IMG/VR virus record: IMGVR_UViG_3300043436_004687
Location: 1-64,000 of that record
Reading direction: 5' to 3' (one strand)
Length of the DNA: 64,000 nucleotides
Every line of letters begins with the position of its first letter. Position 1 is the first letter of the stretch. The translations under genes and the position numbers were made by a program. The notes beneath the pieces are model-generated. The model made no database searches. It was given only the letters and a program-made list of their open reading frames with translations, and was not told the DNA's origin. This document shows positions 14,251 to 58,338 of this stretch, in pieces.

Positions 14251-14842
14251 GGTATATATTTCTATATTTTATGTAACTCTAAATCCCATTTTATTTTATT
14301 CTTATAAAGAAATCACACCGTTTTCAATCCTATACCCATAAGATTTGGTTGCATCATCAAAGAGTTTTTCTGAGTCTAAATTATTATCATGCATGAACAT
14401 TTCTTCTTCGTTATCTGTGATAAATTTTGTTTGAAATGTTAAAACTAATTCGTTCATAATTTCCCCCAAACTATTTTGCCCATATTTAGATAAACCATCA
14501 ACAACATTCTTTTTACCTTTATCAAACCTAATTAATCCTTTATTACCATCTTTCGATATATAAGTTTTCCCATTTTCTTCTATTATTTCAAAACCTTCTT
14601 TTTTTAAATTGTTAAGTTCTTCTTGGGTTTTAACATAAGATTTAATTAGGATTGATGAGTTATTTTTAACCATCCAGTATTCCCCATCTTTTTCTTCAAT
14701 TTGTATTGATGTTTTATTTTCAACATCTTCAATTGTAAACTCTTTTTGAAATGTAATTTCTAATGACATATTATTTATTGTTATTTAATTTATATTGCAA
14801 ATATAACAATAAATTCTATTAAAACCCATTTATTTTAAATAA

Positions 14843-15601
14843 ATTATTATTCCTTTACGGATTAAAATAAATACTACAATAGAATTTTATCAACGTGTTG
14901 ATACTGTATTGTGATTCCCTTACGGATTAATATAAATACTAACTATAGTTTTTGGACAATCAGCAACTGATGCATTGTGATTCCATTTCAGATTAGGATA
15001 AATACTACAGTCAAAGTTTATTATGGGTCAAATAAAACATTGTGATTCCATTACGGATTAAGATAAATACCAATTGTATTAGCGAACGTTTCTCAAATGG
15101 AACGGTTGTGATTCCCTCACGGATTAGGATAAATACCAATTTATATGCTTCATATTGTTCCAACCTATCGGTTGTGATTCCCTCACGGATTAGGATAAAT
15201 ACCAATTCAAAAATGGTCCCAAAGAAAGATTGGTAGGTTGTGATTCCCTCACGGATTAGGATAAATACCAATAACTGAAACTGAATCAATGCTTTGTACT
15301 TAGTTGTGATTCCCTCACGGATTAGGATAAATACCAATATTAATATTTATGATATTACTTATTGGTTTGTTGTGATTCCCTCACGGATTAGGATAAATAC
15401 CAATGTATTCCCAACTATATTTAAAGAGATTAGGTTGTGATTCCCTCACGGATTAGGATAAATACCAATTATAATAATTTCAGATATGCAAGTTAATGTG
15501 TTGTGATTCCCTCACGGATTAGGATAAATACCAATTTATGAAGCTTTATAACAAGCTGTATGATAGTTGTGATTCCCTCACGGATTAGGATAAATACCAA
15601 T
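14843..15601. CRISPR. CRISPR array: 12 repeats of 36 nt (GTTGTGATTCCCTCACGGATTAGGATAAATACCAAT), 11 spacers of 29-30 nt
   Basis: Identical repeats start at 15105, 15171, 15237, 15303, 15369, 15434, 15500, 15566; degenerate copies at 14843, 14908, 14974, 15039, so the likely active/leader end faces cas6. Confidence 0.98.
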
Positions 15602-15714
15602 TGCTCTTTGTAAACTCCAATAATCATTGGAGAAAATTACCAATTTTACTAATGGGAAATGAGTATTTTTAAATCTATTTAATATAATTAGCCTCATTTT
15701 TTTAATCCTAGTGT

Positions 15715-30019: not shown

Positions 30020-30562
30020 TTATCTTGCAAATATTTCATTACTCCCTTGTTTTATGTGATTAACTTTTACTTCTGCACCAATTATTTTACCCCAAGATTC
30101 AAACATTTCAACATGTTCTGGTCTATCTTCAAATAGTTCAACTTCTTCCACATGTGGGAATTCTTCTAACAATTTATCTAACGTTTTGATTTTACAAGAA
30201 AATGTCTCACCACCAGTATTGTAGTAATATCTATGAAATTTTAAATTATGTTTTTCAAGTATCAATTCAACTTCTTTAGATAATACAGTTCTTCTGCCAG
30301 TCATCATAATACAAAGAGTATTTTCTCTTTGGAATTCTCTTTTATAAAAATTAAAAGTTTCTTCAATAAGTTCATTATCAAATATATTGACATCCAAAGA
30401 TTCTGGCTTACCCCACCAGCCAATATGTGGCCAATCTAATCCAGTTTTTTCTTTATATTTAATTTTACCAGTTTCGGGTAATTCAGTTGAAATTAAAGTG
30501 CCATCAAAGTCAAAAACACTTATTTTAATTATTTTTTCATTTATATTTCCAGACATATCCAT
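30020..30562 (-). CDS. HAD-family phosphatase (Swiss-Army-Knife RNA-repair-like)
   Basis: VFDFDGTL, WWGKPESL, MMTGR, FEDRPEH. Confidence 0.82.
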   Translation of the reverse strand: MDMSGNINEKIIKISVFDFDGTLISTELPETGKIKYKEKTGLDWPHIGWWGKPESLDVNIFDNELIEETFNFYKREFQRENTLCIMMTGRRTVLSKEVELILEKHNLKFHRYYYNTGGETFSCKIKTLDKLLEEFPHVEEVELFEDRPEHVEMFESWGKIIGAEVKVNHIKQGSNEIFAR

Positions 30563-31220
30563 ATGCTTGTTTTGTTTTATTTCTTAAATTAGCACTAATG
30601 TTTTTTCTACTTAACCCTATTTCAATTTCAACATCTTTAGCACTCTTCCATTCTTTGATGAAATTACCTTCTTTATCATATTGTAAAATAGGTTTTTTAA
30701 CACTTTCAGCATTATTTCTCACCCACTCTTCCGATTTATTTATTTTACGTCCTTTTAATTTATCAATTGCTATTTGATGTGCTAAAGTTTTACCAGTTTT
30801 TTTTCGGCTTTCTGAAATTAATTTTTTAGTTTCTTCGCTATGTTTTTCACGTACCCTATTTCTATTAAAATTTCTTATTTTTTCTTTATGCTCCTCACTA
30901 ATTTTTCTACCAAAACCACCATCGCCTCCAAGAGTTAAATTCATTCCATTTTTATTATTTAAATAAAATGAATTAAAAAAACCAATAAGGTATATTTCTA
31001 TCTCGTTTAATTCTTTTAAGTTATTTTCACCCTCATAAATAATATCAATCGTGTGAGCACTAAAACCATATTTTAATAATGAATTATAAATTAATGGTTG
31101 TTTTTTACAATTTAATCCTTTATAATTACTAATCCTTTTATTTATATTACTACTTTTCCCAATATAAATTTTACCTGTAGGAGAGGTGATTTTATAAATG
31201 TATGAGTATTTCTTTTCCAT
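30537..31220 (-). CDS. GIY-YIG homing endonuclease with NUMOD3/NUMOD1 domains
   Basis: YIYKITSPTGKIYIGKS..R; KHSEETKKLISE; KPILQYDKEGNFIKEWKS..YGYVWKY. Confidence 0.9.
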   Translation of the reverse strand: MEKKYSYIYKITSPTGKIYIGKSSNINKRISNYKGLNCKKQPLIYNSLLKYGFSAHTIDIIYEGENNLKELNEIEIYLIGFFNSFYLNNKNGMNLTLGGDGGFGRKISEEHKEKIRNFNRNRVREKHSEETKKLISESRKKTGKTLAHQIAIDKLKGRKINKSEEWVRNNAESVKKPILQYDKEGNFIKEWKSAKDVEIEIGLSRKNISANLRNKTKQAYGYVWKYK

Positions 31221-31265
31221 AAGTGAGTTTAACTATAAATAGCTCACTTTTTATCGAAATCAAAA

Positions 31266-31322
31266 TTATTTTAAAGTACCATCTAAATCAAAAACTGATA
31301 TTTTAGTTATTTTTTTATTCAT
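31266..31322 (-). pseudogene. Orphan original N-terminus of the HAD gene (MNKKITKISVFDLDGTLK*)
   Basis: Duplicates KIIKISVFDFDGTL of the 30020-30562 ORF on the other side of the GIY-YIG gene. Confidence 0.75.
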
Positions 31323-44671: not shown

Positions 44672-45607
44672 TTAATTAGTTTTGGTGGTTAGAAATTTTA
44701 TCAATTTTTTCATCATATCTCTATGTTCTTCAACGATATTTAATACAATAAACCCATCATTAAATTTTTCAATATCAAAATACTTCAACTCTTCAATATC
44801 ATCACTTGCTATTGGTCTACCCATTTGATCCCAATCATAAGTTAAAAACAAGGTAGTTAAGATACCACTTTCTTGACCTCTATATCTCCAATCTTCAACT
44901 TTTTGACTCAACACATAGTGCATAGTTAAAGCACTCAATTTACTTTCCTCATATAATTCTCTACGAGCAGCCATTTCTAAGCTTTCATCACTTCTATCAA
45001 CAAACCCACCAATAAATCTAAATTGTTCTTCATTAGGTTTTCTAGCTAGTAATATTTTATTACCACTAACCACAACCACATCAACAGTTGGGTAAGTAAC
45101 TGCTCTATTTTTATATGTTTGAAAAATGACACCATTCCTAAAATCTTTAGAATTAATTTCATTCTTGGCAATTTCATTTCTTAAATCAGATGCGTTAAAA
45201 TATTCATTTTCACTTTCTAACTCAATGGTTTTAAAAATTCCATTATAACTAGGGATAAAAGAATCTCTACAACCATATAAAACAACACTTTTATTATCGC
45301 TAACACTTAATATTGATTTATCTAAATCATTAGACCAGATAGAATCAAATCTTTGATCTAAAAGTGGTAAAATAATGATATTAGGGTATAATTCTTGAAT
45401 CATATTCTTCCTCATTGAAAATGATAAAGGATTCTTTTTAGTGTTTTGTATTTTAGCAACGCCTATAAATAAAATTACTTTTTTATGCTTTGAGGAAACA
45501 TAATCTATTAACCCTAAATGACCTTCATGTAATTCATTTATTTGAAATCTTCCAATGATAACACCAGTTTCAAATAGATTAGAATCTAAATTAGTTTTAT
45601 TCTTCAT
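44672..45607 (-). CDS. Bifunctional NMN adenylyltransferase / Nudix hydrolase (NadM-Nudix)
   Basis: IIGRFQ..HEGH, NPLSF..R; Nudix GGFVDRSDESLEMAARRELYEE. Confidence 0.92.
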   Translation of the reverse strand: MKNKTNLDSNLFETGVIIGRFQINELHEGHLGLIDYVSSKHKKVILFIGVAKIQNTKKNPLSFSMRKNMIQELYPNIIILPLLDQRFDSIWSNDLDKSILSVSDNKSVVLYGCRDSFIPSYNGIFKTIELESENEYFNASDLRNEIAKNEINSKDFRNGVIFQTYKNRAVTYPTVDVVVVSGNKILLARKPNEEQFRFIGGFVDRSDESLEMAARRELYEESKLSALTMHYVLSQKVEDWRYRGQESGILTTLFLTYDWDQMGRPIASDDIEELKYFDIEKFNDGFIVLNIVEEHRDMMKKLIKFLTTKTN

Positions 45608-45612
45608 ATTTT

Positions 45613-46011
45613 TTAATTTAAAATTTCTTTTACAATATTACTCAATGATTTACCATCATACAAACCATCATAATTTGTTTTAAAATGGGCCATTATTTTA
45701 CCCATATCTTTTGGTGAATTCCAACCTTCAGTATCTTTAACTAAATTAATAGCTATCTTCATTTCATTATCTGACATTTGTTTTGGAATATACTTTTCTA
45801 AAACTTTAATTTCAAATTCATTATTGGTAGTTTCTACAACACCCTCAATTAATTTTTTAACTAATTTTACAATATCAGCATCAGTCAATTCCACCTTACC
45901 TTTATTTCTTTCGATTTCACCCTTTAACACTTTAAGAATATCTCTAGTAATATAATCTTTTGCAATAATTGCTTTTGTAATATCGTAATTTATTAATTCT
46001 GTTAAGTTCAT
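45613..46011 (-). CDS. GatB/YqeY-domain protein
   Basis: LEKYIPKQMS, PKDMGKIM, DGKSLSNIVKEIL. Confidence 0.85.
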   Translation of the reverse strand: MNLTELINYDITKAIIAKDYITRDILKVLKGEIERNKGKVELTDADIVKLVKKLIEGVVETTNNEFEIKVLEKYIPKQMSDNEMKIAINLVKDTEGWNSPKDMGKIMAHFKTNYDGLYDGKSLSNIVKEILN

Positions 46012-46646
46012 ATGTTTATTATTTTTAATTATTGAGCAAATTTATTAAAAATATTTCAAATATCCTAATTATAATTTAAAATAATAGTGAAAATTTTTAT
46101 TTTCTTCTGTATCAAAGGCTAAATAAGCCCATTGTATTTTCTTTTCTTGAATTAACTTAGAAAGTTTATTATATTCCTCAAGGGATTCATCTTCCGCAAT
46201 TCTAATATAAGTTTTATCTAATAAATTTTTTGTTTTTGCTGGTCCTATTCTAGATGAAACTGGTAATAATTTAACAGAAGATTTAATTCGTTTAATAACA
46301 TTCTTTTTAATTATCTTATTGCTAATTTTAGATGTGGTAACAGAAGCAGTTTTACTTGGAGCTTTATTTAAACCTATTTTCTTTTTCACTAATTTCCAAT
46401 TTAATTAAATCTTCTCTTAATCTATTTTTTAAACTTTCTTCCCCATCATCACCACCAAAAAATTTATATAATCTATTGGAATAAATTTCAGCTATTTTTA
46501 ATATTTTAGAAGCTTCGTTTAAAATTTCAATTGTTTCACTAGAATAAATTTCATTAAATTCTTTATTCTGAATACCCTCAATTTCTTTTCCTTGATTATC
46601 TATATTTTCTTGAATATTTTCATAAAGCTCTTTAATAATATAACTC

Positions 46647-47165
46647 TTATTCATTTTTTAATTTTAAATAATCGTTAAACCTTTCTTTTGAAGCATATTC
46701 TTCAAACCTATAATCTAAATTATCTTCATTATAAGGTCCATCAAACTTCAATAAAACCCAATTTTCATTTATCAAACCATCAACAAAAATATCACCATCA
46801 ACTTCATTAAGAATGTTGGTTAAATATAGTTTATCAGCTAAATTAAATGATTGTTTATATATTTCCGCACCCCCAATAATGAATAATTCCTCACCAACTT
46901 TATCAAATTCTTTAATTGCTTCAATTAAATTATTTCTAATCTCACAACCCTCTGCTTTAAATTCAGTATTTCTTGTTATAACAACATTTATTCTGTTGGG
47001 TAAAGGTCTGTATGGCAATGAATCCCAAGTATTTCGCCCCATAATGATTGTTTTACCTGAAGTTACTTTCTTAAAGTTTTTTAAATCGGTTGGTAAGTTC
47101 CAAGGTAAATCATTTTTTTTACCAATAACACCATTTTTAGACATCGCTAATATAATACTTATCAT
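46647..47165 (-). CDS. folA: Dihydrofolate reductase
   Basis: NGVIGKKNDLPW.LPTDL, IMGRNTW, PLPNRIN, IIGGAEIY. Confidence 0.96.
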   Translation of the reverse strand: MISIILAMSKNGVIGKKNDLPWNLPTDLKNFKKVTSGKTIIMGRNTWDSLPYRPLPNRINVVITRNTEFKAEGCEIRNNLIEAIKEFDKVGEELFIIGGAEIYKQSFNLADKLYLTNILNEVDGDIFVDGLINENWVLLKFDGPYNEDNLDYRFEEYASKERFNDYLKLKNE

Positions 47166-47167
47166 CC

Positions 47168-47725
47168 TTATTTGTTTTTAAAATTATAATATTTTTCAGA
47201 ACCATCTGCTTTCGAATAAATTATCCTAGTAGCAGTTAATTTTATAGGATTATCTAAGTTTCTAATATAATCTTTACCTTTACCTCCCTTTACAAAAGCT
47301 ATGGTTGCATGGGCCTCATACTTAGGAAAATCACTCTTAAAAGGCAATTCTTTTAGTTTTTTATTCATATCCTTTAATGATTTATCGTTGATGTTGAATT
47401 TAACTACATCAATATCATCATTTTCAAATATATCTATTTTATCAAAGGTAATTTCTGGAGCTACAAATTCACAAACAATTTTTTTAAGTTCACTATCTTT
47501 AATACTAGGTAATAACCCATAAAGTAAAGTAATGTGAAAATTAGTTTCCCTACCTGATTTCCCATCAATATCAGAAACATCTTCATCCTTAATAGCATCT
47601 TGTAATTCTTTCATTTTATCTTTGGGTAAGTTAAAATCAAGCATCACACAACCATATTTATACTTTACCCCAGCTATTTCATTAAGCCTCATTCTTAACG
47701 ATTCTCTAATCAATTCCTTTCTCAT
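47168..47725 (-). CDS. 2H phosphoesterase (Acb1/gp57B-like)
   Basis: Two HxT motifs: HITLLYG and HATIAF. Confidence 0.75.
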   Translation of the reverse strand: MRKELIRESLRMRLNEIAGVKYKYGCVMLDFNLPKDKMKELQDAIKDEDVSDIDGKSGRETNFHITLLYGLLPSIKDSELKKIVCEFVAPEITFDKIDIFENDDIDVVKFNINDKSLKDMNKKLKELPFKSDFPKYEAHATIAFVKGGKGKDYIRNLDNPIKLTATRIIYSKADGSEKYYNFKNK

Positions 47726-48488
47726 TCTTACAATATATTAAATGTTCGTCATTATTATATAAATCAGTTAACAAATCACTTTGCCAATATTCTTTGGTGT
47801 CTACATCCATTATGGTTAACCTACCGTTAGAACCACCACCAGTATCTAAATTCCAAAGATTATAAAAATTAAGTGGTTGGTCTGTTGCAAACATAAGTGT
47901 GGGTGTATGACCTATAAAAATTTCTTTATAATTATTCAATCTTTTAGGTCTATACCTAATTAAATCCTCTATATTATCTTTATGCTGATGACTAACCGTA
48001 TAGGCTGCATCTAAAAGACTTCTATCCCAATATAATGTAGATAATTGGAACTCATCTCTGACTCCTTTAGGTGCCTTAAAACCACCATGTACGAATAATC
48101 TATTTTTATTATCAATGTAGTAATAATCTAACTGATCAATAAATTTTCTATGTTCATTTAAATCATATGTTGTTTTCCTATATGAATTTAATGTGGAATG
48201 CCCACCATTATTTAACCAATTAAAATTTACTACACCAAATACTAAGTATTCCCTTAACCATGCATCATGATTACCAAGTATAAAGATGGGTTTAAAATCA
48301 CATTCATTTTTTAACTTTATTAAATAATCTATAGTTTCAACAGCTGTTGCAAAACCATCTACATAATCCCCCAAGAAAATTAATTGATCTTCTTTTTTAT
48401 TAAAATTACATCTTTCCAAAACTTGTACTAATGCTAAATAACCATTATGTATATCTCCTATTACAAGCGTTCTTTTAATTTTAATCAT
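47706..48488 (-). CDS. Metallophosphoesterase (Ser/Thr phosphatase-like)
   Basis: IGDIH, FLGDYVD, LGNHD, FVHGG, IGHTP, LDTG. Confidence 0.9.
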   Translation of the reverse strand: MIKIKRTLVIGDIHNGYLALVQVLERCNFNKKEDQLIFLGDYVDGFATAVETIDYLIKLKNECDFKPIFILGNHDAWLREYLVFGVVNFNWLNNGGHSTLNSYRKTTYDLNEHRKFIDQLDYYYIDNKNRLFVHGGFKAPKGVRDEFQLSTLYWDRSLLDAAYTVSHQHKDNIEDLIRYRPKRLNNYKEIFIGHTPTLMFATDQPLNFYNLWNLDTGGGSNGRLTIMDVDTKEYWQSDLLTDLYNNDEHLIYCKNEKGID

Positions 48489-49169
48489 TTATTTAAATTT
48501 AAATTTATAACCATGTGTATGTTTTCTTTCTTCTTTACAAACCCTAGAAATCATTTTATAACTAATACCAGTTTCATTTGATGCTATTCTACCCGAAGAA
48601 AATTCTTTAATGAAATTATCATTTAAATCTAATTGAATAACTGGTTTTTCACCATTACAACTAATTAATTTATAAGGAAATTTTTCAAATTTTTCAAATA
48701 GCCATAAAAAACCACCAGCCGAATTAATTCCATTTTCATTACTTTTTTTACATGCTCTTAAAATATTACTATCTGGAATTTTAAATTCAATACCTGCATG
48801 ATTAGAATTTTCAAATGTTTTAATAAACTCACCATTTAAAGAATATTGATGGACTAACTTACCAACTTTTACTAAACCTAAACAATTATCCCAAGAATTT
48901 GTTAAATTATAACGTTTCATTAATTTTCTCATAAAAGTTTTTTCAATTTTTATTGATTCATCAATAGTACATACTTCATGATAAATTACATCTAATATTG
49001 GGTCACATTTTAAACTTCTAATCCAATTACATTTATGACTTTTACAATCACCTTTAGATTCTTTAATATGACATCTTAATCTATTTTTTGGGTTTAAAGT
49101 TCTACCAAAATATTTAATTTCATTTGTGTTTGGATTGCGTAATACATAAAAGTAACATTCTCGTTTCAT
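48489..49169 (-). CDS. GIY-YIG homing endonuclease with two NUMOD1 domains
   Basis: FYVLRNPNTNEIKYFGRT..RLRCH; VHQYSLNGEFIKTF; VIQLDLNDNFIKEF..HGYKFKF. Confidence 0.85.
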   Translation of the reverse strand: MKRECYFYVLRNPNTNEIKYFGRTLNPKNRLRCHIKESKGDCKSHKCNWIRSLKCDPILDVIYHEVCTIDESIKIEKTFMRKLMKRYNLTNSWDNCLGLVKVGKLVHQYSLNGEFIKTFENSNHAGIEFKIPDSNILRACKKSNENGINSAGGFLWLFEKFEKFPYKLISCNGEKPVIQLDLNDNFIKEFSSGRIASNETGISYKMISRVCKEERKHTHGYKFKFK

Positions 49170-49214
49170 CTTTTTATTTTAAGATAAACATGAAATATTA
49201 TTTTTAAATATTAT

Positions 49215-49262
49215 TTAATCAATATAATCACCTATAACAAGCGTTCTATTTGGGTTTAACAT
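49215..49262 (-). pseudogene. Orphan original N-terminus of the metallophosphoesterase (MLNPNRTLVIGDYID*)
   Basis: AGAACGCTTGTTATAGGTGAT versus AGAACGCTTGTAATAGGAGAT in the intact gene. Confidence 0.75.
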
Positions 49263-49796
49263 TTATTCTTTAATTTTAATATATTTTGATGGTACTTCTT
49301 CAGTTAACCAAACATTATTTTTAGACTTATAAAATTTATAACCATCTTTAAGCATTGATTTAGAATCAACTATCAATATAATTGGGTTACCTCTTCTGGA
49401 ACCTACATTGGTAGCAGTATTCAGATTATCACTTAAATGAACATGATTTCTATTCATTGGTTTTAACCCCTCTTTAAGAATTGGTTTTATGAATTTTTCA
49501 ACTGTTCCATGATACAATGTGATTGGTGGGATAGAAATTTTTAAATCAAGATCAACATTTATAGAATGGCCTTGATTTGCTCTAATTTTAGATTTATCTT
49601 CATTAAATGTAAATCGTTGTTTATCATTAGAAAAAACAATTTCATCTAATTCTTTTTTGGTAATATGATAATCTTTTAATGAACATTTTTCCAATAATTC
49701 ATCAACGCCAACCCAACCATTTTTATCTAATTTGATATTTATTGTTTCTGGTTTATGTCTTAAGATAAGACTAAGAAATTTACTATTATTTTTCAT
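49263..49796 (-). CDS. kptA: RNA 2'-phosphotransferase (Tpt1/KptA)
   Basis: LSLILRHKP, DKQRF, IRANQGHS, LYHGT, RNHVHLS. Confidence 0.95.
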   Translation of the reverse strand: MKNNSKFLSLILRHKPETINIKLDKNGWVGVDELLEKCSLKDYHITKKELDEIVFSNDKQRFTFNEDKSKIRANQGHSINVDLDLKISIPPITLYHGTVEKFIKPILKEGLKPMNRNHVHLSDNLNTATNVGSRRGNPIILIVDSKSMLKDGYKFYKSKNNVWLTEEVPSKYIKIKE

Positions 49797-50208
49797 TTTA
49801 TATATTTTAACACCAACGCATCATTTTATTACAATTAGGGCATTTTAAGTAATGATAAGTATCAGTACCCCCACCATAAGGTTCATTTTCCACTTTTTTG
49901 TCTACTTCATTCTCAAAATATTCTATTACTGCACCACAAGATGAATGAGTTCTTTGTTTAGCTTTTGATTTATCAATTTTTAAAACTTTTGCCATAATAC
50001 TTTGTTTTTAATTTATTGCAAATATAAGATTTTATATGCAAACTTCCAAATTATATTTTATTTATCTGAACCATAAATTAAAAGTTTATTGCATCACCTT
50101 AATGCTTTAGGGTTAATTACACACCAACCCCTTAGCCATTTAAGGGGTTGCTACCACTTCTTTATTTTTAATTTATTTATCATTTTATTTATTTTATTTG
50201 TTTTATTG

Positions 50209-50284
50209 TCGGGATAGCAGGGATCGAACCTGCGTGAATGTCCTACTCCCAAAGTAGGCGACTTACCAATTAGTCCATATCCCG
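50209..50284 (-). tRNA. tRNA-Pro(TGG)
   Basis: CGGGATA/TATCCCG acceptor; CCTAC-TTTGGGA-GTAGG; T-loop TTCGATC. Confidence 0.95.
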
Positions 50285-50292
50285 TGTTATTG

Positions 50293-50375
50293 TGGTGAGA
50301 TGAGGACTCGAACCTCTCCATTTTAATGACTAGATTTACAGTCTAGCTGCCATATCCAAATGACTTTATCGCACC
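50293..50375 (-). tRNA. tRNA-Tyr(GTA)
   Basis: CTAGA-CTGTAAA-TCTAG; long variable arm; T-loop TTCGAGT. Confidence 0.92.
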
Positions 50376-52652: not shown

Positions 52653-55600
52653 TTAGAAACCAATAGTAACATTAGGTGTAATGTAATCTATCCCGTCCCA
52701 ATTTGTATAACAAACGCCATAAGTAATTTTACCCACCGAATAACTAATTCCAGAACCATATTCAATGAAACCATTACCAACTTGGTTGTTAAAATAACTA
52801 CCAGCACCAAATATAATATTAGCATTAACAGCACCCAGAGGGAATGATGGGACTACTTTTACTTCCCAGTAGTAATTACCTATAGAGTCAGATGTATATA
52901 TTTTATCACCATTTTTATAATCATAAGGACATGCTGTGGTTTCATCCAGTACTTGTTCATAATTACCAGAAAAATATTTTCTACTACCTAAACCTCTAAG
53001 ATTTCCACGCCCTAAAACAAAACCTAATGATAGGTTATCACGAGAAACACCAAATTCTAAACTAGGGTATGCAGCATCTCTAAATTCATATGAATTTGAG
53101 TTGTCACCATAATCATTACCATTTGAAATCGATAAATTTAAAGCAACATATTTAGACCATTTTGGTTTGTCTGTTTTAACAGAATCCACTGAAGTAGAAT
53201 CAACATTTACGGAAACCGCTTTTGTGTGATGTACACCAGCATGTCTTTTTTGACTAAAAGAAAGAATAGTAAATAATAATGTAATAAATAATAATTTTTT
53301 CATAATTTTATATTTTTAGTTAATAATTAAAGTACAAAAATATAACAAAAATTTATACTTTCCAAATTTATTTTAAGATTTTAATAAATAAATTTATCTT
53401 TAAGTTTAAATGATTTACTATCATATGTAAAAGAACCATGTAATTCACCTGGAACACCATAACTATTAGACGCATTAAAATATATCGACATATAAAAATC
53501 TTTTTTGTCACCAAATTTTGGATAAATCGAAATTGATTTTGGGTTAAATGTTTCTGGGTTATTACATGAATATTTACATTCGATTAAAGCAGAATTAATA
53601 AGTGATTTTAATTTTCCACTATTTGGTAAAGTAGATAGTTCATTTTTTTGAATAGGAAGAATATCAATTGTAGTGCTATCCGAATCTTTATTATAATCTA
53701 ATTTAATTTTTTTATTTAAACCCCATAAAGTGTCTTTAGTTTTTTTAAAGTCTGAGACTATTTTCCAATCTTCTTTATGGAAATAACCTGAACATTCATA
53801 ATTTAATTCTGGTTGACAGCTTACAAAAGCCAATGTGCTCAATAGTAGTAGAGTTCCTAATAACAATTTTTTCATTTTTAATGTTTTTAAATTAGAGTAC
53901 AAATATATAACAAATATTTGTATTATCAAAATTTATTTTAAGATTTTAATAAAATTTCTTTTATTTCTTTGGTTTATAAATTACTATTATTTTAACAATG
54001 TAATATTATTTTGAAGTACAATTGATAGTTTAATCGCATTTGCCTTAGAAATTAAGATATATGCACCATCTAAATCCTCAAGATAAATATTATTAGAGAA
54101 ATCGTATAGATTAATATTAAAACCATCCCCATGGTCTCTTATATTAGATTTAGGTGGGATTTTACTAAAAACTTTTAATTTATCAATTAACATTTGTAAA
54201 CCTTCTTTATTACCAATAAAAATAGTACCAACATCATAAATATAATTATATTTACCATTTTTAAATTGAAAAATGAAATATGTTGTTTCAACCCCATTTT
54301 CAACATCTTTTTGTATCTTCCAATTATATTCCACACCTTTTGCTAGTGTTGTTGTAATTATTTGTTGACTAAATGTTGTAAATGCGCTCAATAATAGTAG
54401 AGTTCCTAATAATAATTTTTTCATTTTATTTTTATTTAGAAATTGCCATTATAATTGCAGCACCAACCCATAATCCAATTATTGAAAGAATTATTATACC
54501 TATTGTCTTCAATATTTTACCACCTTGTTTTTGTTCTGCTTCTCTTTTTGCACCCCTATCTTTAAAATCATCATTTGGATTTTGAATAATGTGACTAATA
54601 GCTTCAAAAATTGATTGTAATCTGCTATTAGATGCACTTATTTCACTAGGTTCATCGATAGCACCAATTTGTTTCTGAATTTCAACTGTTATTTTAGTTT
54701 TACCGCTATCACCTTCAATTACATCAATAATTATTCGATACATACCTGCAAATAACCCAGTTGTAAATTTGAATTGACCTAATAATTCATCATATGATTC
54801 TAACGTATATGATGGTTCATAATTGTTAAGTTTTTTAATTGCTAACACAACTTCAAAAATCGATTTAGATACTTGAATATCCCTTTTAATAATTTGATTC
54901 ATTTTATTTATTTTTAAATTAGAATACAAAGATAATACAAATATTTGTATTATCAAAATTTATTTTAAGATTTTAATAAAATTTCTTTTATTAAGTAAGT
55001 AATGTTTTTTAATTTTACTATTTAATAAATTTCATTAATTCCTTTTTAATATTTTCATATTCTTCTTGAGTAATTACACCCAAGTCTAGTTTTATTTTTG
55101 TTTTCTGTAATTCAGCTAGTGCTTGGTCGCTTGTTATTGATGCTTTTGGGTTTATTAATTCCCCATATTGTAGTGCAAGGTCTAAATTTAAAACAGTAAT
55201 ATCCATTCCAGGATTATCAAATATAACCATTACACCTGCGTTTGTTGCTTTCTTTCCATTTTTGACAAACTTTATATCCTCAATTTCTACTTCACTTCCT
55301 TTAAACGCATCGGGTAAATAAGTTATACCACTTAATATCGCACTTCCCATTCTGCCCAACATTAAATAACTAAAAATATTTACATTTTGGTTCGACGAAC
55401 CAAAAATTCCTGGTGTTTGTTGATTTGATGTATTAGTTCCACTTGGTTTCCCTAACAACATTTTATCACCAATTTGTAAAGTCGAACCATCTACAAAATT
55501 TAAATATTTAAATTTTGTAGAATTCGAAATTGATTTTACCCATTCTGTGTCATTTAATTTTGATATGAATAATGTATCGGCTAATTGGGCTGATGTTGAA

Positions 55601-55974
55601 ATACTAAACCCTAAAAAGAGTAATAAAATCGTTTTCTTCATTTTATTTGTTTTTGATTAAGATAAGAAGTTAAATATTATATTTGAACCAATAGAATATT
55701 AATATTCTATTGAGTTTCCTACAACTAGATTAACTGGTTGGAATAATACATTCATTCCATTAATTAAAGTAATTGTAACATTTTTAGTATTACCAGAACA
55801 GACATCTACCAATGTTAAATTTGTTTTTGTAATAGTTTGGTTGCTAGAACTAATACTAGTCACAGTTTCACCAATACTAGTTATCTTACCTATTAAACAA
55901 TCATTAGGCTCATTCTCACAACTTGTTAATGTTAGCATTAGCATTAACACTAATAATGTAATATTTTTTTTCAT
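52653..55974 (-). CDS. Array of mostly exported/lipoprotein genes in repeated promoter cassettes (52653-53303, 53381-53875, 53987-54424, 54432-54902, 55018-55641, 55699-55974)
   Basis: MKK-hydrophobic signal peptides; shared upstream repeat; SHOCT-like C-terminus in 55018-55641. Confidence 0.7.
53876..53965 (-). repeat. Promoter/leader cassette repeat; copies near 38572-38605, 53330-53385, 54903-54992, 55975-56005
   Basis: ttttaaattagagtacaaa(t/g)ata and caaaatttattttaagattttaataaaatttc shared. Confidence 0.8.
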
Positions 55975-56098
55975 CCTTAATATTTTAAATTAGAGTACAA
56001 ATATACTATTTTATTTTTACATAACAAATAAAATACCAAAATTTATTCCGTTAAATAATACTAAACTAATGAAACCCAACCTATCTTCAATATTAATT

Positions 56099-56836
56099 TT
56101 ATATTTTTTCATCAATCTTTTTTTTTAAATCTTCTTTAATTTCATTTAATTGTTTTGATAATTCTTCAATAGTATCAATACTAGCATTATTATTTCTTTC
56201 TTTATCGGTGAAAAAATTAGAAACATATCCAACTAAAGCACCAAATAAACCGATTCCAGAAATCATAAGTAAAATAGAAACTATTCTACCACCCTCAGTA
56301 ATAGGAAATTTATCACCATAACCAACTGTTGTAATTGTACAAACAGCCCACCACATTGCATCGTATGCGTTTTTTATATTACATTCTGGTAAAACTTCAA
56401 ATTGCATTATTGAAATTGTTGCAAATGTGACTAATAACACCCCAAATACTAACATTGATTTAAACGCTGAATTTATGCTTTCTAGCACAAACTCTATTGT
56501 CGTTTTAACACATCTAATTGTCACACCAACAGTTAACCAAGATAACGAATAAAATGGTAAACAAAGAAATATATCAACCCAACTGATTTTTAAAAATTTT
56601 ATTTTGTTCTTAGATAAATAAAATCTATAACCAAAATCAGCTAAGAAAAAATAACAGACAACATGTAACATTTCATTCAACTTAGGACCAGATAATATTG
56701 TGTCAACTAATAAAATTAGCAAACATAATATTGAAAATGTAATCCTAACATAATGATATCGACCTTCAACAACCTCATCATTTAAATATTCTTTAAATGG
56801 GGATGTTAAATTTTCTTCTTTTCTTTGTACAAACAT
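56099..56836 (-). CDS. Potassium channel (Kv/MVP-like)
   Basis: Pore helix and filter [17 protein letters not shown]; multiple TM helices; C-terminal coiled coil. Confidence 0.93.
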
Positions 56837-57201
56837 TATCTTCTACTTGACGAACTTTTACTACTTGAACTACCAAAAGAGGATTTACTTCTATTAGAAG
56901 ATGAATTACTAGTTGTAGTATTTTTATTACCACCAAAACCAGTTGTTTTAGGTTTTGAGTTAGATGGTGTTGTTTTGGTAAATGATTTTTGACTTTTTGT
57001 TGGTTTTGAAATTTCCTTAGCTCTACTTGTTACTGCTGATGATACCTTATTAGAGTTAGGTGATTTGATATTACTTTTCACACTAGCTTTAGAATTTACA
57101 ACAATTTCAGGTTGATTAACTTGGATGTTTGAACTAGTTTGTTGACTATCTTTACAAGAAAATAGTGCGAATAACAAACTAAAAATTATTAATTTTTTCA
57201 T
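56836..57201 (-). CDS. Lipoprotein with Ser/Thr/Gly-rich tail
   Basis: LFALFSC lipobox; [19 protein letters not shown]. Confidence 0.65.
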
Positions 57202-57264
57202 AATTTGTGTTTTTAATTGTTAATATTGAGGCAAATATATAACAAATAATTTTAATAACCTAAT

Positions 57265-58338
57265 TTATTTTAAATTATTTTTATAATTATTAATCTCACT
57301 AATTAAATTTTCTTTTATTTCAAGTGGAGCTTTCTTTTTATTACCCTTAGTCTGAAATTGTAATAACCTATAATTACCACCATCAATACCTAATTCAAAT
57401 GTGCCCCTAATTTTTAATTCTAAATTATGATATTTATAAATTAAACTTTGCCCATATTTACATTTTTCCCAATAACCAGACCCACCAACACAATGTCTCA
57501 TTTCTTGCCCCTCATAAACCAACCCAAATTTTGAAGTTAATAATGTAGAATGATTAAATGTTGGATAATCCACGTTCGGATCTAAAAATTCATTTTCCTC
57601 AGATAAAAGCTTTTTTTCTCTAATTTGATGTGACCAATTATCGTGTTCTAACTTAATCCTTTTAAGACTCCATTTCATATTTACTTTATAACCTAAATTA
57701 GGTGCATCAATAAACATATCCACAAGATTCATTTTCTTTAATTTGTGAATATGTTTAAAAAACATTGTTTTATCTAAACAATGGTTTAGATAATAGTATA
57801 TTGGTTGGTAACGAGAAACTTTATTTTGCCAATGAATTACCTTAACACTAAGACAATTTTTGAAAGCAGACATTGGAAAATTTTCAAGTGGGACTTGGTT
57901 ATTTATTAAATTTAATTTTATAATATCTGTAGGTGTAGTATATTTTTTAAATACACAATCCAAAAATACTTTAAAATCTAATTTGATATAGTGATTAACA
58001 TCATTAATACATTCATCCAACAAAAATTCTAATCCTAAATAATTTAATAACTTAGAATCTTTCCAACAACCATAAAAATTAATAAAATTTGTTAATTTTT
58101 TATTAATCAAATCAACCTCAAACAAACCTAACGTTATAAAATTACTTTCAGAAAAATTATATAAAGAAAAATTTAATCTTCTATATTCAACATATATTCT
58201 AGTCTCATTTTTCTCAATATAATAAAAATAACAGCCACCAGTATCGTAATCACTATCATTTTTAAATTTTAACCTAATGCTTTTTAATTGATTTTTTTTA
58301 CTATAATTTTTAGCAAAAATTCTAAAACCTTTTTTCAT
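57265..58338 (-). CDS. PcfJ-like domain protein
   Basis: LVYEGQEMRHCVGG..SLIYKY..TFEL..LLQFQTKGN. Confidence 0.7.
   Translation of the reverse strand: MKKGFRIFAKNYSKKNQLKSIRLKFKNDSDYDTGGCYFYYIEKNETRIYVEYRRLNFSLYNFSESNFITLGLFEVDLINKKLTNFINFYGCWKDSKLLNYLGLEFLLDECINDVNHYIKLDFKVFLDCVFKKYTTPTDIIKLNLINNQVPLENFPMSAFKNCLSVKVIHWQNKVSRYQPIYYYLNHCLDKTMFFKHIHKLKKMNLVDMFIDAPNLGYKVNMKWSLKRIKLEHDNWSHQIREKKLLSEENEFLDPNVDYPTFNHSTLLTSKFGLVYEGQEMRHCVGGSGYWEKCKYGQSLIYKYHNLELKIRGTFELGIDGGNYRLLQFQTKGNKKKAPLEIKENLISEINNYKNNLK

What the first reader, a model, noticed from the sequence alone, without database searches (positions are those of the whole stretch)
47706..49262. Second case of the same strategy: GIY-YIG-NUMOD1 duplicating the metallophosphoesterase N-terminus
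Stub MLNPNRTLVIGDYID* (49215-49262) precedes the endonuclease; the intact gene restarts MIKIKRTLVIGDIHNG right after it. The 21-nt duplicate differs only at two third positions. The same nuclease family and the same breakpoint type (first catalytic Asp motif) as at 30-31 kb indicate a recurring mechanism.
Basis: partly seen in the sequence, partly recalled or inferred. Interest (0 to 1): 0.62.

Follow-up and report, generated by a model that had tools for sequence, protein, structure and literature searches.

The report
Homing endonuclease with replacement gene start
A selfish endonuclease gene has landed inside the start of a phage phosphatase gene and brought a spare gene start with it, so the phosphatase stays whole and its old 15-codon start is left as a scar; the trick is known from fungal mitochondria, and I found no phage report of it.

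Summary
On the minus strand the order is Tpt1/KptA, a 15-codon stub (MLNPNRTLVIGDYID*), a 45-nt spacer, an intact GIY-YIG/NUMOD1 endonuclease gene, and a complete metallophosphoesterase (MPE) gene. The MPE ATG directly follows the endonuclease stop. Stub and MPE share 19 of 21 nt in the same codon register (p about 5e-5).

It is not an assembly artefact: contigs from four other lake-water runs bridge both junctions without a difference. It is not a group I intron. Two syntenic relatives are empty alleles, with Tpt1 running straight into the MPE.

Every relative of this endonuclease with at least 52% identity whose contig was read sits directly 5' of an MPE gene, behind different upstream genes. 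Six of eight distinct loci, the window included, keep an 'xxGD' remnant plus a conserved leader.

Three of the genome's six GIY-YIG genes, from different lineages, are flanked by a duplicated end of their target gene. In the longest case the displaced copy matches the endonuclease-free relative better, so it is the native end.

Best reading: homing by double-strand-break repair, with a cassette-borne replacement gene end. This is the phage counterpart of mitochondrial 'mobile ORF plus duplicated terminus' hybrid genes. The cleavage site and the origin of the two N-termini in this case are inferred, not shown.

The parts
49263..49796 (-). RNA 2'-phosphotransferase (Tpt1/KptA) gene. It is the native upstream neighbour of the MPE gene, and its TAA stop abuts the stub's ATG.
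   Evidence: Pfam PTS_2-RNA 1.5e-55. In the relatives L102 and L012 the same gene runs directly into the MPE gene.
49215..49262 (-). Stub: 15 codons plus a stop (MLNPNRTLVIGDYID*). It is read as the displaced original N-terminus of the MPE gene, and it stands where a native MPE start would stand.
   Evidence: Position argument from L102 and from P0145's contig. 19 of 21 nt match the MPE start.
49227..49247 (-). Upstream copy of the 21-nt duplicate (AGAACGCTTGTTATAGGTGAT, codons 6-12 of the stub, RTLVIGD).
   Evidence: It differs at 1 of 21 positions from the empty allele of L012.
49170..49226 (-). Cassette leader: the last three stub codons, the stop, and the 45-nt spacer. It carries GGTGAT-N6-GAT and an AT-rich box that are shared with the leaders of related endonuclease cassettes. 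It is a possible promoter or operator of the endonuclease gene.
   Evidence: Alignment A2. The motif recurs in L013, L015, L016, L019/L199 and L198. In the relatives the box is TAnnTTTG; in the window it is degenerate.
48489..49169 (-). Free-standing GIY-YIG / NUMOD1 homing endonuclease gene, 226 aa and intact.
   Evidence: Pfam. Y20, G22, R30, H34, E76 and N91 are invariant across 14 relatives. The C-terminal region resembles the DNA-binding part of I-HmuI.
47706..48488 (-). Complete metallophosphoesterase gene (lambda-phosphatase type). Its own ATG follows the endonuclease stop directly (TAAATG).
   Evidence: Pfam Metallophos 4e-17. Nearest solved structure is 1g5b, the lambda Ser/Thr phosphatase. 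Motifs GDIHNG, GDYVDG and GNHD are present. Sister to the endonuclease-free L012 in the tree.
48453..48473 (-). Downstream copy of the 21-nt duplicate (AGAACGCTTGTAATAGGAGAT, codons 6-12 of the MPE gene).
47168..47725 (-). 2H / LigT / Acb1-like phosphoesterase gene. It is the downstream neighbour and is also conserved next to the MPE gene in L012.
   Evidence: Pfam Acb1 4.2e-6 and 2_5_RNA_ligase2 5.1e-6, both at the cut-off. L012 gene table.
31266..31322 (-). First case: stub MNKKITKISVFDLDGTLK*, a duplicate of HAD motif I.
   Evidence: 45 nt, 84% identity, local E 9e-6.
30537..31220 (-). First case: GIY-YIG endonuclease gene with NUMOD3 and NUMOD1. It belongs to a different lineage from the 48-kb enzyme.
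   Evidence: Pfam. Pairwise comparison.
30020..30562 (-). First case: complete HAD_SAK_1 phosphatase gene, whose start overlaps the 3' end of the endonuclease gene.
   Evidence: Pfam HAD_SAK_1 8.4e-14..

Best explanation
A free-standing GIY-YIG/NUMOD1 homing endonuclease gene entered the 5' end of the resident metallophosphoesterase (MPE) gene of this 340-kb lake-water phage. It did so by double-strand-break repair.

The mobile unit is not the endonuclease gene alone. It is a cassette with four parts:
- a short left arm made of MPE motif-I codons (...IGD);
- a conserved leader;
- the endonuclease gene;
- a replacement MPE start, with its own ATG placed directly after the endonuclease stop.

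Proposed sequence of events:
1. The enzyme cuts an endonuclease-free MPE allele at or near the codons of the first metal-binding motif (RTLVIGD|IHNG).
2. The broken ends pair with the cassette's left arm and with the MPE body.
3. Repair copies everything between them.
4. The recipient's own start codon and first 12 codons are pushed upstream. They remain behind Tpt1 as a 15-codon stub that ends in cassette sequence (YID*).
5. The phosphatase is still made whole, from the cassette-borne start.

What is shown:
- the anatomy;
- the non-random duplicate;
- the empty alleles in syntenic relatives;
- the fixed link between this endonuclease clade and MPE 5' ends behind varied upstream genes;
- the conserved leader;
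- the recurrence of the pattern with two other endonuclease lineages in the same genome.

What is inferred:
- where the enzyme cuts;
- that the stub is native and the working start is foreign;
- how the resident copy escapes cutting.

The two direct repeats would also allow precise loss of the insert.
For: Anatomy and chance:
- Anatomy.
- Chance test: p about 5e-5, with both copies in the same codon register.

Real DNA:
- Contigs with 0 differences bridge both junctions in four further runs.

Empty alleles:
- L102 is a 43-kb contig with Tpt1 overlapping the MPE gene, then DHFR and YqeY as in the window.
- In L012 the 26 nt before the MPE gene read ...YIKIK*. That is the C-end of the 79%-identical Tpt1 P0145.

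Phylogeny:
- The window's MPE is sister to endonuclease-free L012 (support 99), inside a clade that also holds endonuclease-free L102.
- Other endonuclease-linked MPE genes fall elsewhere in the tree.
- Only 1 of 80 IMG/VR phage MPE loci carries this endonuclease.

Target fidelity:
- Relatives at 52-61% identity whose contigs were read sit directly 5' of an MPE gene. These are L013, L015, L016-18, L019-21/L199, L106/107/L201, L108 and L198.
- Their upstream genes differ: RNR, a phosphoribosyltransferase, small ORFs.
- Relatives at 42% identity or less sit in other genes.

Cassette boundary:
- Six distinct loci carry an MPE-like xxGD remnant: RTLVIGD, M*IIIGD, (I)NKKIIGD, INVFGD, LFGD, DLVGD.
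- In each it is followed by the conserved GGWGAT-N6-GAT...TATAT(T/C)TTG.
- The sequence is variable left of the junction and conserved right of it.

Position:
- The stub's ATG abuts the Tpt1 stop, as a native MPE start does in the relatives.
- The working start abuts the endonuclease stop, as in all the cassettes.

Generality:
- Three of six GIY-YIG genes in the genome, only 28-40% identical to each other over parts of their length, are flanked by a duplicated target end.
- At genome 321.7-322.8 kb the displaced DUF932 C-end shares 5 extra residues with the endonuclease-free relative L190. The working C-end shares none.

Precedent:
- Mitochondrial mobile ORFs with a duplicated gene terminus (PMC3630166).
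Against: - No cleavage or homing data exist, and no donor genome with the same working N-terminus was found.
- The native-versus-foreign test is blind in this case: L012 matches the stub at 29 of 36 nt and the working copy at 28 of 36 nt.
- No co-conversion mosaic is visible along the MPE protein.
- The working copy carries an intact motif-I sequence. Within the 21-nt core it differs from the presumed target only at two synonymous sites (and in codons 2-5), so its immunity is unexplained.
- A codon-based immunity signal was tested and rejected.
- Two of the eight distinct cassette loci (L106/L201 and L108) have no stub.
- In AT-rich DNA, short 'IIGD' or 'FGD' strings are weak evidence of coding ancestry. 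In L016 and L019 the TTTG of the Phe-Gly codons lies 21 nt before a TAnnTTTG box, so the element could simply be a Bacteroidota-type promoter.
- No reads or contigs with an empty allele of this same phage were seen.
Confidence: 0.7

Rival explanations
1. One ancient insertion followed by vertical descent. The 'stub plus leader' is kept because it works for the endonuclease gene, not because homing renews it. It would act as the gene's promoter, and perhaps as an operator that resembles the homing site, where the enzyme binds without cutting and represses itself, as I-TevI does. On this view the window's stub is an old scar and the differing upstream genes reflect rearrangement.
For: - GGWGAT-N6-GAT...TATAT(T/C)TTG is conserved among cassettes whose endonucleases are only 57-61% identical. 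Neutral DNA would not be conserved at that distance.
- The box fits the Bacteroidota -7 consensus TAnnTTTG. That consensus comes from my own knowledge. The genome's own roughly 50-fold intergenic repeat carries TATCTTTG.
- I-TevI's operator overlaps its promoter and matches its homing site at 15 of 20 nt (PMC2988022).
Against: - The window's stub keeps 19 of 21 nt, including G/C-bearing codons, a full 12-codon N-terminus and an ATG that abuts the upstream stop. That looks recent, not ancient.
- The window's MPE is nested among endonuclease-free syntenic relatives.
- The stub abuts a different upstream gene in every genome, which would need breakpoints exactly at its 5' edge each time.
- The window's own leader lacks a clean TAnnTTTG box.
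- This reading is partly compatible with the best explanation: a left arm can also serve as an operator.
Confidence: 0.2
2. The stub is exon 1 of a split or intron-containing MPE gene. The endonuclease gene lies in a group I intron, and the mature mRNA joins the stub to the MPE body.
For: More distant relatives of this endonuclease (38-42% identity) do lie in intron-like settings inside ribonucleotide reductase genes.
Against: - No Rfam family, group I introns included, matches 47500-49500 even at E up to 1.
- The downstream ORF has its own ATG and a complete N-terminus that repeats the stub's codons, which splicing would make redundant.
- The stub ends in a stop after three unrelated codons.
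Confidence: 0.02
3. The similarity is due to chance, to local slippage unrelated to the endonuclease, or to a chimeric assembly.
For: The DNA is 26% G+C and the match is only 21 nt long. AT-rich sequence gives many short matches.
Against: - Shuffle test p about 5e-5.
- The match is in frame, at the same codon offset, and covers the catalytic motif.
- Two further endonuclease genes in the genome show the same layout, with 45-nt and 97-nt duplicates.
- Independent runs reproduce both junctions exactly.
Confidence: 0.02

Closest known systems
Mitochondrial mobile ORFs that create hybrid genes with a duplicated terminus: Allomyces macrogynus atp6 + ORF360 (Paquin, Laforest and Lang 1994); Glomus atp6, atp9, cox2 and nad3; Rhizopus atp9; Mortierella cox2 (all as summarised in PMC3630166)
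   Same: An endonuclease ORF travels with a piece of its target gene. After insertion the gene is completed by the imported end, and the native end is displaced beyond the endonuclease ORF as a remnant. The displaced end is the one closer to endonuclease-free relatives, which is shown here for the DUF932 case.
   Different: - The host is a phage genome, not mtDNA.
- In this case the duplicated end is the N-terminus, so the cassette must supply a start codon (TAAATG coupling to the endonuclease stop).
- The endonuclease ORF is not fused in frame to the gene.
- The duplicate is very short (21 nt, 12 codons).
- The enzyme is GIY-YIG/NUMOD1.
Free-standing Seg (GIY-YIG) and Mob (HNH) endonucleases of T4-like phages: 'intronless homing' (PMC2988022)
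   Same: A stand-alone endonuclease gene sits beside the conserved gene it targets. Its distribution among related phages is sporadic. It is thought to spread by break repair with co-conversion of flanking DNA.
   Different: As described in PMC2988022, the T4 genes lie between genes or split a gene. I found no description there of a duplicated target end that keeps the gene whole.
Gene-splitting endonuclease insertions: mobE in nrdA of Aeromonas phage Aeh1, mobA in T4 gene 39/60, and seg in gene 43 of phage 25 (PMC2988022, PMC3045599)
   Same: The endonuclease gene is inserted inside the coding region of a conserved enzyme, at a functionally critical motif.
   Different: In those cases the two halves are both needed and reassemble as a protein. 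Here the downstream ORF is complete and the upstream piece is redundant.
I-TevI autorepression at an operator that mimics the homing site (Edgell et al. 2004, as described in PMC2988022)
   Same: A target-like sequence lies just upstream of the endonuclease ORF and overlaps what looks like its promoter.
   Different: Binding and repression have not been tested here. I-TevI's operator lies inside an intron and is not a remnant of the target gene's reading frame.
[quoted passage not shown]
   Same: An N-terminal gene segment is duplicated as a by-product of homing-type gene conversion.
   Different: That case is driven by an intron and occurs in a mitochondrion. I did not read the primary paper.

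Membership tests
GIY-YIG homing endonucleases (I-TevI / Seg type) | N-terminal GIY-YIG catalytic domain with the conserved Tyr, Tyr, Arg, His, Glu and Asn | tested here: met
   Pfam PF01541 scores 34.1 bits against a cut-off of 22.6. Y20, G22, R30, H34, E76 and N91 are invariant in 14 relatives.
GIY-YIG homing endonucleases (I-TevI / Seg type) | C-terminal modular DNA-binding region (NUMOD / helix-turn-helix) | tested here: met
   NUMOD1 4.4e-10 and I-HmuI_NUMOD-like 3.4e-5. Weak match to the I-HmuI chain 1u3e over residues 169-226.
GIY-YIG homing endonucleases (I-TevI / Seg type) | Present or absent at the same locus among related genomes | tested here: met
   L012 and L102 lack it between Tpt1 and the MPE gene. 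Only 1 of 80 IMG/VR MPE loci has it.
GIY-YIG homing endonucleases (I-TevI / Seg type) | Site-specific cleavage of the endonuclease-free allele, and one-way gene conversion in mixed infection | not testable with these tools
   This needs the purified enzyme, or co-infection; no cultured host is known.
Mobile-ORF hybrid genes with a duplicated terminus (Allomyces atp6 type) | Endonuclease ORF flanked by two copies of a terminal segment of one gene, with one copy continuous with the gene body and the other displaced | tested here: met
   for this case. for the two other cases in the genome.
Mobile-ORF hybrid genes with a duplicated terminus (Allomyces atp6 type) | The displaced copy is the native one (closer to endonuclease-free relatives) and the working copy is imported | tested here: inconclusive
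   - This case: 29 of 36 nt against 28 of 36 nt versus L012.
- HAD case: 12 of 15 residues each versus L195.
- DUF932 case: met, with 5 extra shared residues for the remnant and 0 for the working copy.
- Position also favours a native stub.
Mobile-ORF hybrid genes with a duplicated terminus (Allomyces atp6 type) | Endonuclease ORF fused in frame to the host gene (seen in some, not all, mitochondrial cases) | tested here: not met
   The stub and the endonuclease ORF are in the same frame, but two TAA codons separate them, and the endonuclease has its own ATG.
Group I intron-encoded endonuclease | Ribozyme core around the ORF, with exons that join to give the gene | tested here: not met
   No Rfam match at E up to 1 in 47500-49500. 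The downstream ORF is complete on its own.
Gene-splitting endonuclease insertion (Aeh1 nrdA type) | Two non-overlapping gene pieces, both needed for function | tested here: not met
   The stub's 12 codons are repeated in the 260-aa downstream ORF, which holds all the phosphoesterase motifs.
Calcineurin-like metallophosphoesterase, lambda-phosphatase type (the target gene) | Motifs GDxHG, GDxxDRG and GNH[ED], plus the later His motifs | tested here: met
   GDIHNG, GDYVDG and GNHD are present, and the positions are invariant in alignment A3. Best solved match is 1g5b at 2.1e-8.

The most novel reading that the evidence does not exclude
The short target remnant plus the conserved leader is a working part of the element, with two jobs.
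- It is a portable left homology arm. This would let the cassette home into any phage genome that carries an MPE gene, whatever lies upstream. That would explain why one endonuclease clade sits at MPE starts behind RNR, phosphoribosyltransferase, Tpt1 and small-ORF neighbours.
- It is also the endonuclease's promoter and operator, built from degenerate motif-I codons (GD-x-x-D-N-x-x-Y-L against GDIHNGYL). The enzyme would bind there without cutting and so limit its own expression.

If both hold, this is a self-contained, synteny-independent homing cassette for protein-coding genes. It would need neither intron nor intein.
Probability: 0.3. Interest if true: 0.65.

Novelty: new member of a known kind. 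Interest (0 to 1): 0.45.

Why it matters
Homing endonuclease genes are usually said to survive inside genes only by hiding in introns or inteins, or else by sitting between genes. This locus shows a third route in a phage: the element carries a replacement gene end, so it can sit inside a conserved enzyme gene without harming it.

For annotation, short 'orphan' ORFs next to endonuclease genes may be displaced gene ends. The neighbouring gene's start or end may be foreign.

For phage evolution, this gives a way to exchange gene termini between unrelated phages. It also flags the first catalytic motifs of RNA-repair-type phosphatases (MPE, HAD_SAK) as homing targets.

For tool-building, an endonuclease clade faithful to one short, conserved coding sequence could serve as a source of site-specific nucleases.

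Tried and rejected
1. Immunity by synonymous change at the GD codons. In a first small sample, 6 of 7 endonuclease-linked copies avoided GGTGAT and 5 of 6 endonuclease-free copies used it. Among 72 endonuclease-free phage MPE genes only 13 use GGTGAT and 26 use GGAGAT. The signal was a sampling effect.

2. Co-conversion mosaic. Segment-wise identity of the window's MPE to L012, L102 and the cassette-linked MPE genes shows no 5'-to-3' switch.

3. Native-versus-foreign test of the two N-termini. It is inconclusive for this case (29 of 36 against 28 of 36 nt) and for the HAD case (12 of 15 residues each).

4. Empty alleles of the same phage in other samples. Contigs of runs X3-X6 show only the endonuclease-bearing form. 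The two 'joints' listed have 22-23-nt sides at low likeness and were not trusted.

5. Group I intron. There is no Rfam match.

6. Close relatives in GenBank phages. There are none; only Tpt1 and DHFR pieces at 65-68% identity turned up.

7. The metagenome scan for more endonuclease relatives gave one short contig.

8. The sigma-70 promoter and terminator scan gave nothing above shuffles.

9. The apparent 'broken MPE' next to the endonuclease in L020 is a 100-N scaffold gap.

10. The 59-nt blastn extension of the duplicate into the ends of Tpt1 and the endonuclease gene is AT-rich and of low complexity, so it was given no weight.
Full report
**What is there**

The window is the first 64 kb of a 339,635-bp virus record with direct terminal repeats and 26% G+C. 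All the features below lie on the minus strand.
- An RNA 2'-phosphotransferase gene (Tpt1/KptA, 49263-49796) ends in TAA.
- That stop is followed at once by an ATG that opens a 15-codon frame, MLNPNRTLVIGDYID* (49215-49262).
- After 45 nt comes an intact 226-aa ORF (48489-49169). It has a GIY-YIG domain and a NUMOD1 / I-HmuI-like DNA-binding tail.
- The TAA of that ORF is followed at once by the ATG of a 260-aa calcineurin-like metallophosphoesterase (MPE) (47706-48488). It begins MIKIKRTLVIGDIHNG.
- The nearest solved structure to the MPE is the lambda Ser/Thr phosphatase, 1g5b.
- Codons 6-12 of the stub and of the MPE share 19 of 21 nt. The two differences are both at third positions.

**Is it more than chance, and is it real DNA?**

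One of 20,000 shuffles of the 93-nt upstream stretch reached 19 of 21. Among 20,000 random 93-mers of the genome, 7 reached 19 or more. I take those to be the two copies themselves, but I did not check their positions.

The match is also in frame, at the same codon offset, and covers the first metal-binding motif.

Logan contigs of four other lake-water metagenome runs reproduce the stretch with no differences. They bridge both junctions. No Rfam family, group I introns included, matches the region.

**Empty alleles**

The MPE's nearest relative is P0002 (74% identity), on the 1,874-bp contig L012. It begins MKQPIRTLVIGDIHNG. The 26 nt before it read ...ATATTAAAATAAAGTAA, that is ...YIKIK-stop. 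This is exactly the C-end of P0145, the nearest relative of the window's Tpt1 (79% identity).

In P0145's own contig, the next gene starts right after the Tpt1 stop and stays open for 113 codons to the contig end.

A second relative, L102, is a 43-kb contig. It has Tpt1 overlapping the MPE gene, followed further on by DHFR and YqeY as in the window. It has no endonuclease gene.

So in this phage lineage the ancestral state is Tpt1 directly followed by the MPE gene.

A quick maximum-likelihood tree of 125 MPE proteins puts the window's MPE next to L012 (support 99). Both fall inside a clade that also holds L102. Other endonuclease-linked MPE genes fall elsewhere, some of them on long branches.

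**The endonuclease clade is faithful to MPE starts**

Relatives of the endonuclease at 52-61% identity were found on other phage contigs. In every contig that was read, the endonuclease gene lies directly 5' of an MPE gene. The upstream neighbour differs from contig to contig:

| Loci | Upstream neighbour |
|---|---|
| L013 | ribonucleotide reductase |
| L015 | a 65-aa ORF |
| L016-L018 | an 80-aa ORF |
| L019-L021, L199 | a phosphoribosyltransferase |
| L106, L107, L201 | a 423- to 530-aa ORF |
| L108 | a 107-aa ORF |
| L198 | not resolved (short contig) |

Relatives at 42% identity or less sit in other settings, apparently introns in reductase genes.

Among 80 phage MPE loci from IMG/VR, only one carries the endonuclease.

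**A conserved junction**

Six of the eight distinct loci, the window included, carry the same arrangement. It lies about 27 to 60 nt before the endonuclease ATG.

| Locus | MPE-like remnant before the junction |
|---|---|
| window | RTLVIGD |
| L013 | M*IIIGD |
| L015 | (I)NKKIIGD |
| L016 | INVFGD |
| L019 / L199 | LFGD |
| L198 | DLVGD |

- The remnant is followed by the conserved GGWGAT-N6-GAT(A/T)(A/G)T..TATAT(T/C)TTG.
- Left of GGWGAT the sequence differs from genome to genome, and it abuts that genome's own upstream gene.
- Right of it the sequence is shared between cassettes.
- In L013 the remnant begins ATG-TGA. In L015 it begins ATA, where an ATG would overlap the upstream stop. Both look like disabled starts, but this is my reading of the sequence, not a test.

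The shared box fits the Bacteroidota -7 promoter consensus TAnnTTTG. That consensus is from my own knowledge. The genome's roughly 50-fold intergenic repeat at 296-330 kb carries TATCTTTG. The box is degenerate in the window itself.

**Recurrence within the genome**

Six GIY-YIG genes are present. They are only 28-40% identical to one another, over parts of their length. Three of them are flanked by a duplicated end of the neighbouring gene.

| Case | Target gene | Duplicate |
|---|---|---|
| This one | MPE | 21 nt |
| 30-31 kb | HAD_SAK_1 phosphatase | 45 nt at 84% identity, over motif DxDGT |
| Genome 321.7-322.8 kb | DUF932 gene | 97 nt at 90% identity |

In the third case the endonuclease gene lies convergent at the 3' end of the DUF932 gene, and a full native-looking C-end is displaced beyond it.

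There, the endonuclease-free relative L190 (55% identity) shares five residues with the displaced copy that the working copy lacks. It shares none the other way round. This is the same logic that showed a foreign C-terminus in Allomyces atp6 (PMC3630166).

For the HAD case and for the present case the same test is blind. The HAD case gives 12 of 15 residues each. The present case gives 29 of 36 against 28 of 36 nt.

**Mechanism proposed**

The enzyme cuts endonuclease-free MPE alleles near the motif-I codons. Repair uses a cassette whose left arm is the short remnant and whose right arm is the MPE body. The endonuclease gene and a replacement start are copied in, and the recipient's own start is displaced.

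The anatomy, the empty alleles, the target fidelity, the junction pattern and the recurrence are shown. The cut site, the direction of transfer in this case and the immunity of the resident copy are inferred.

Two checks failed to add support. There is no co-conversion mosaic along the MPE protein. A supposed immunity codon proved to be a sampling effect.

The main rival keeps the same origin but holds that the remnant and leader persist because they serve as the endonuclease's promoter or operator. I-TevI's operator mimics its homing site in this way (PMC2988022). The two readings can both be true.

**Comparison with what is known**

The closest parallel is the mitochondrial mobile ORF that inserts together with a duplicated gene terminus and makes a hybrid gene. 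Examples are Allomyces atp6, Glomus atp6/atp9/cox2/nad3, Rhizopus atp9 and Mortierella cox2 (PMC3630166). An N-terminal duplication is reported for Tremella (cited in PMC8393795).

In phages, the review of T4-type elements describes endonuclease genes between genes, or splitting genes into two needed halves (PMC2988022, PMC3045599). My four literature searches found no phage report of a duplicated target end. That is not proof that none exists.

I therefore file this as a new member of a known kind. It is of moderate interest, and the conserved, possibly functional left arm is the part most worth testing.

Noticed in passing
genome 321,700-322,810 (outside the window; locus L006 1300-3152): Third case of the same layout. 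A GIY-YIG endonuclease gene with an I-TevI-type DNA-binding domain lies convergent at the 3' end of a DUF932 gene. A 97-nt, 90%-identical duplicate and a complete displaced C-terminus lie beyond it. The displaced copy is closer to the endonuclease-free relative L190.
   Followed up: partly
genome 296,000-330,700 (outside the window): More than 50 copies of an intergenic repeat of about 60 nt. On the minus strand it reads ...TTATTTTATATCTTTGTAGTGTATTAATCAA..., and it sits just upstream of minus-strand gene starts. It contains a TAnnTTTG box, so it is probably a phage promoter family and a hint of a Bacteroidota host. The best cellular homologues of the MPE and Tpt1 are from Flavobacteriia.
   Followed up: no
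window 53287-57286: Several copies of an intergenic repeat of about 100 nt, 80-94% identical, spaced 0.5-2 kb apart. They look like a second promoter or regulatory family.
   Followed up: no
window 14825-15603: Overlapping direct-repeat matches of about 100-190 nt, 71-75% identical, offset by about 0.5-0.7 kb. Their nature is unknown.
   Followed up: no
window 44672-50375: A cluster with an RNA-repair and nucleotide-metabolism flavour. In order: tRNA-Tyr and tRNA-Pro (50208-50375), Tpt1, MPE, a 2H/LigT phosphoesterase with a borderline Acb1 (anti-CBASS) Pfam hit at exactly the 27-bit cut-off, DHFR, a YqeY-like ORF (45613-46011, by synteny with L102), and a cytidylyltransferase-like + Nudix protein (44672-45607). 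The other endonuclease target, at 30 kb, is a HAD_SAK_1 'Swiss Army Knife RNA repair' phosphatase.
   Followed up: partly
window 31221-31265: The leader of the 30-kb endonuclease gene holds a 7-bp inverted repeat (AAGTGAG...CTCACTT) that ends right at the ATG. It may form a hairpin over the translation start, as is known for some T4 endonuclease genes.
   Followed up: no
genome 92434-93643 and 96118-97319 (outside the window): Two paralogous segments of 1.2 kb, 66% identical, lying 2.5 kb apart.
   Followed up: no
L013 2950-3006; L198 100-150: In these two relatives the MPE-like remnant runs in frame, with no stop, into the endonuclease ORF. This recalls mitochondrial endonuclease ORFs that are fused to the upstream exon. 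In the window the frames also agree, but two TAA codons intervene.
   Followed up: no
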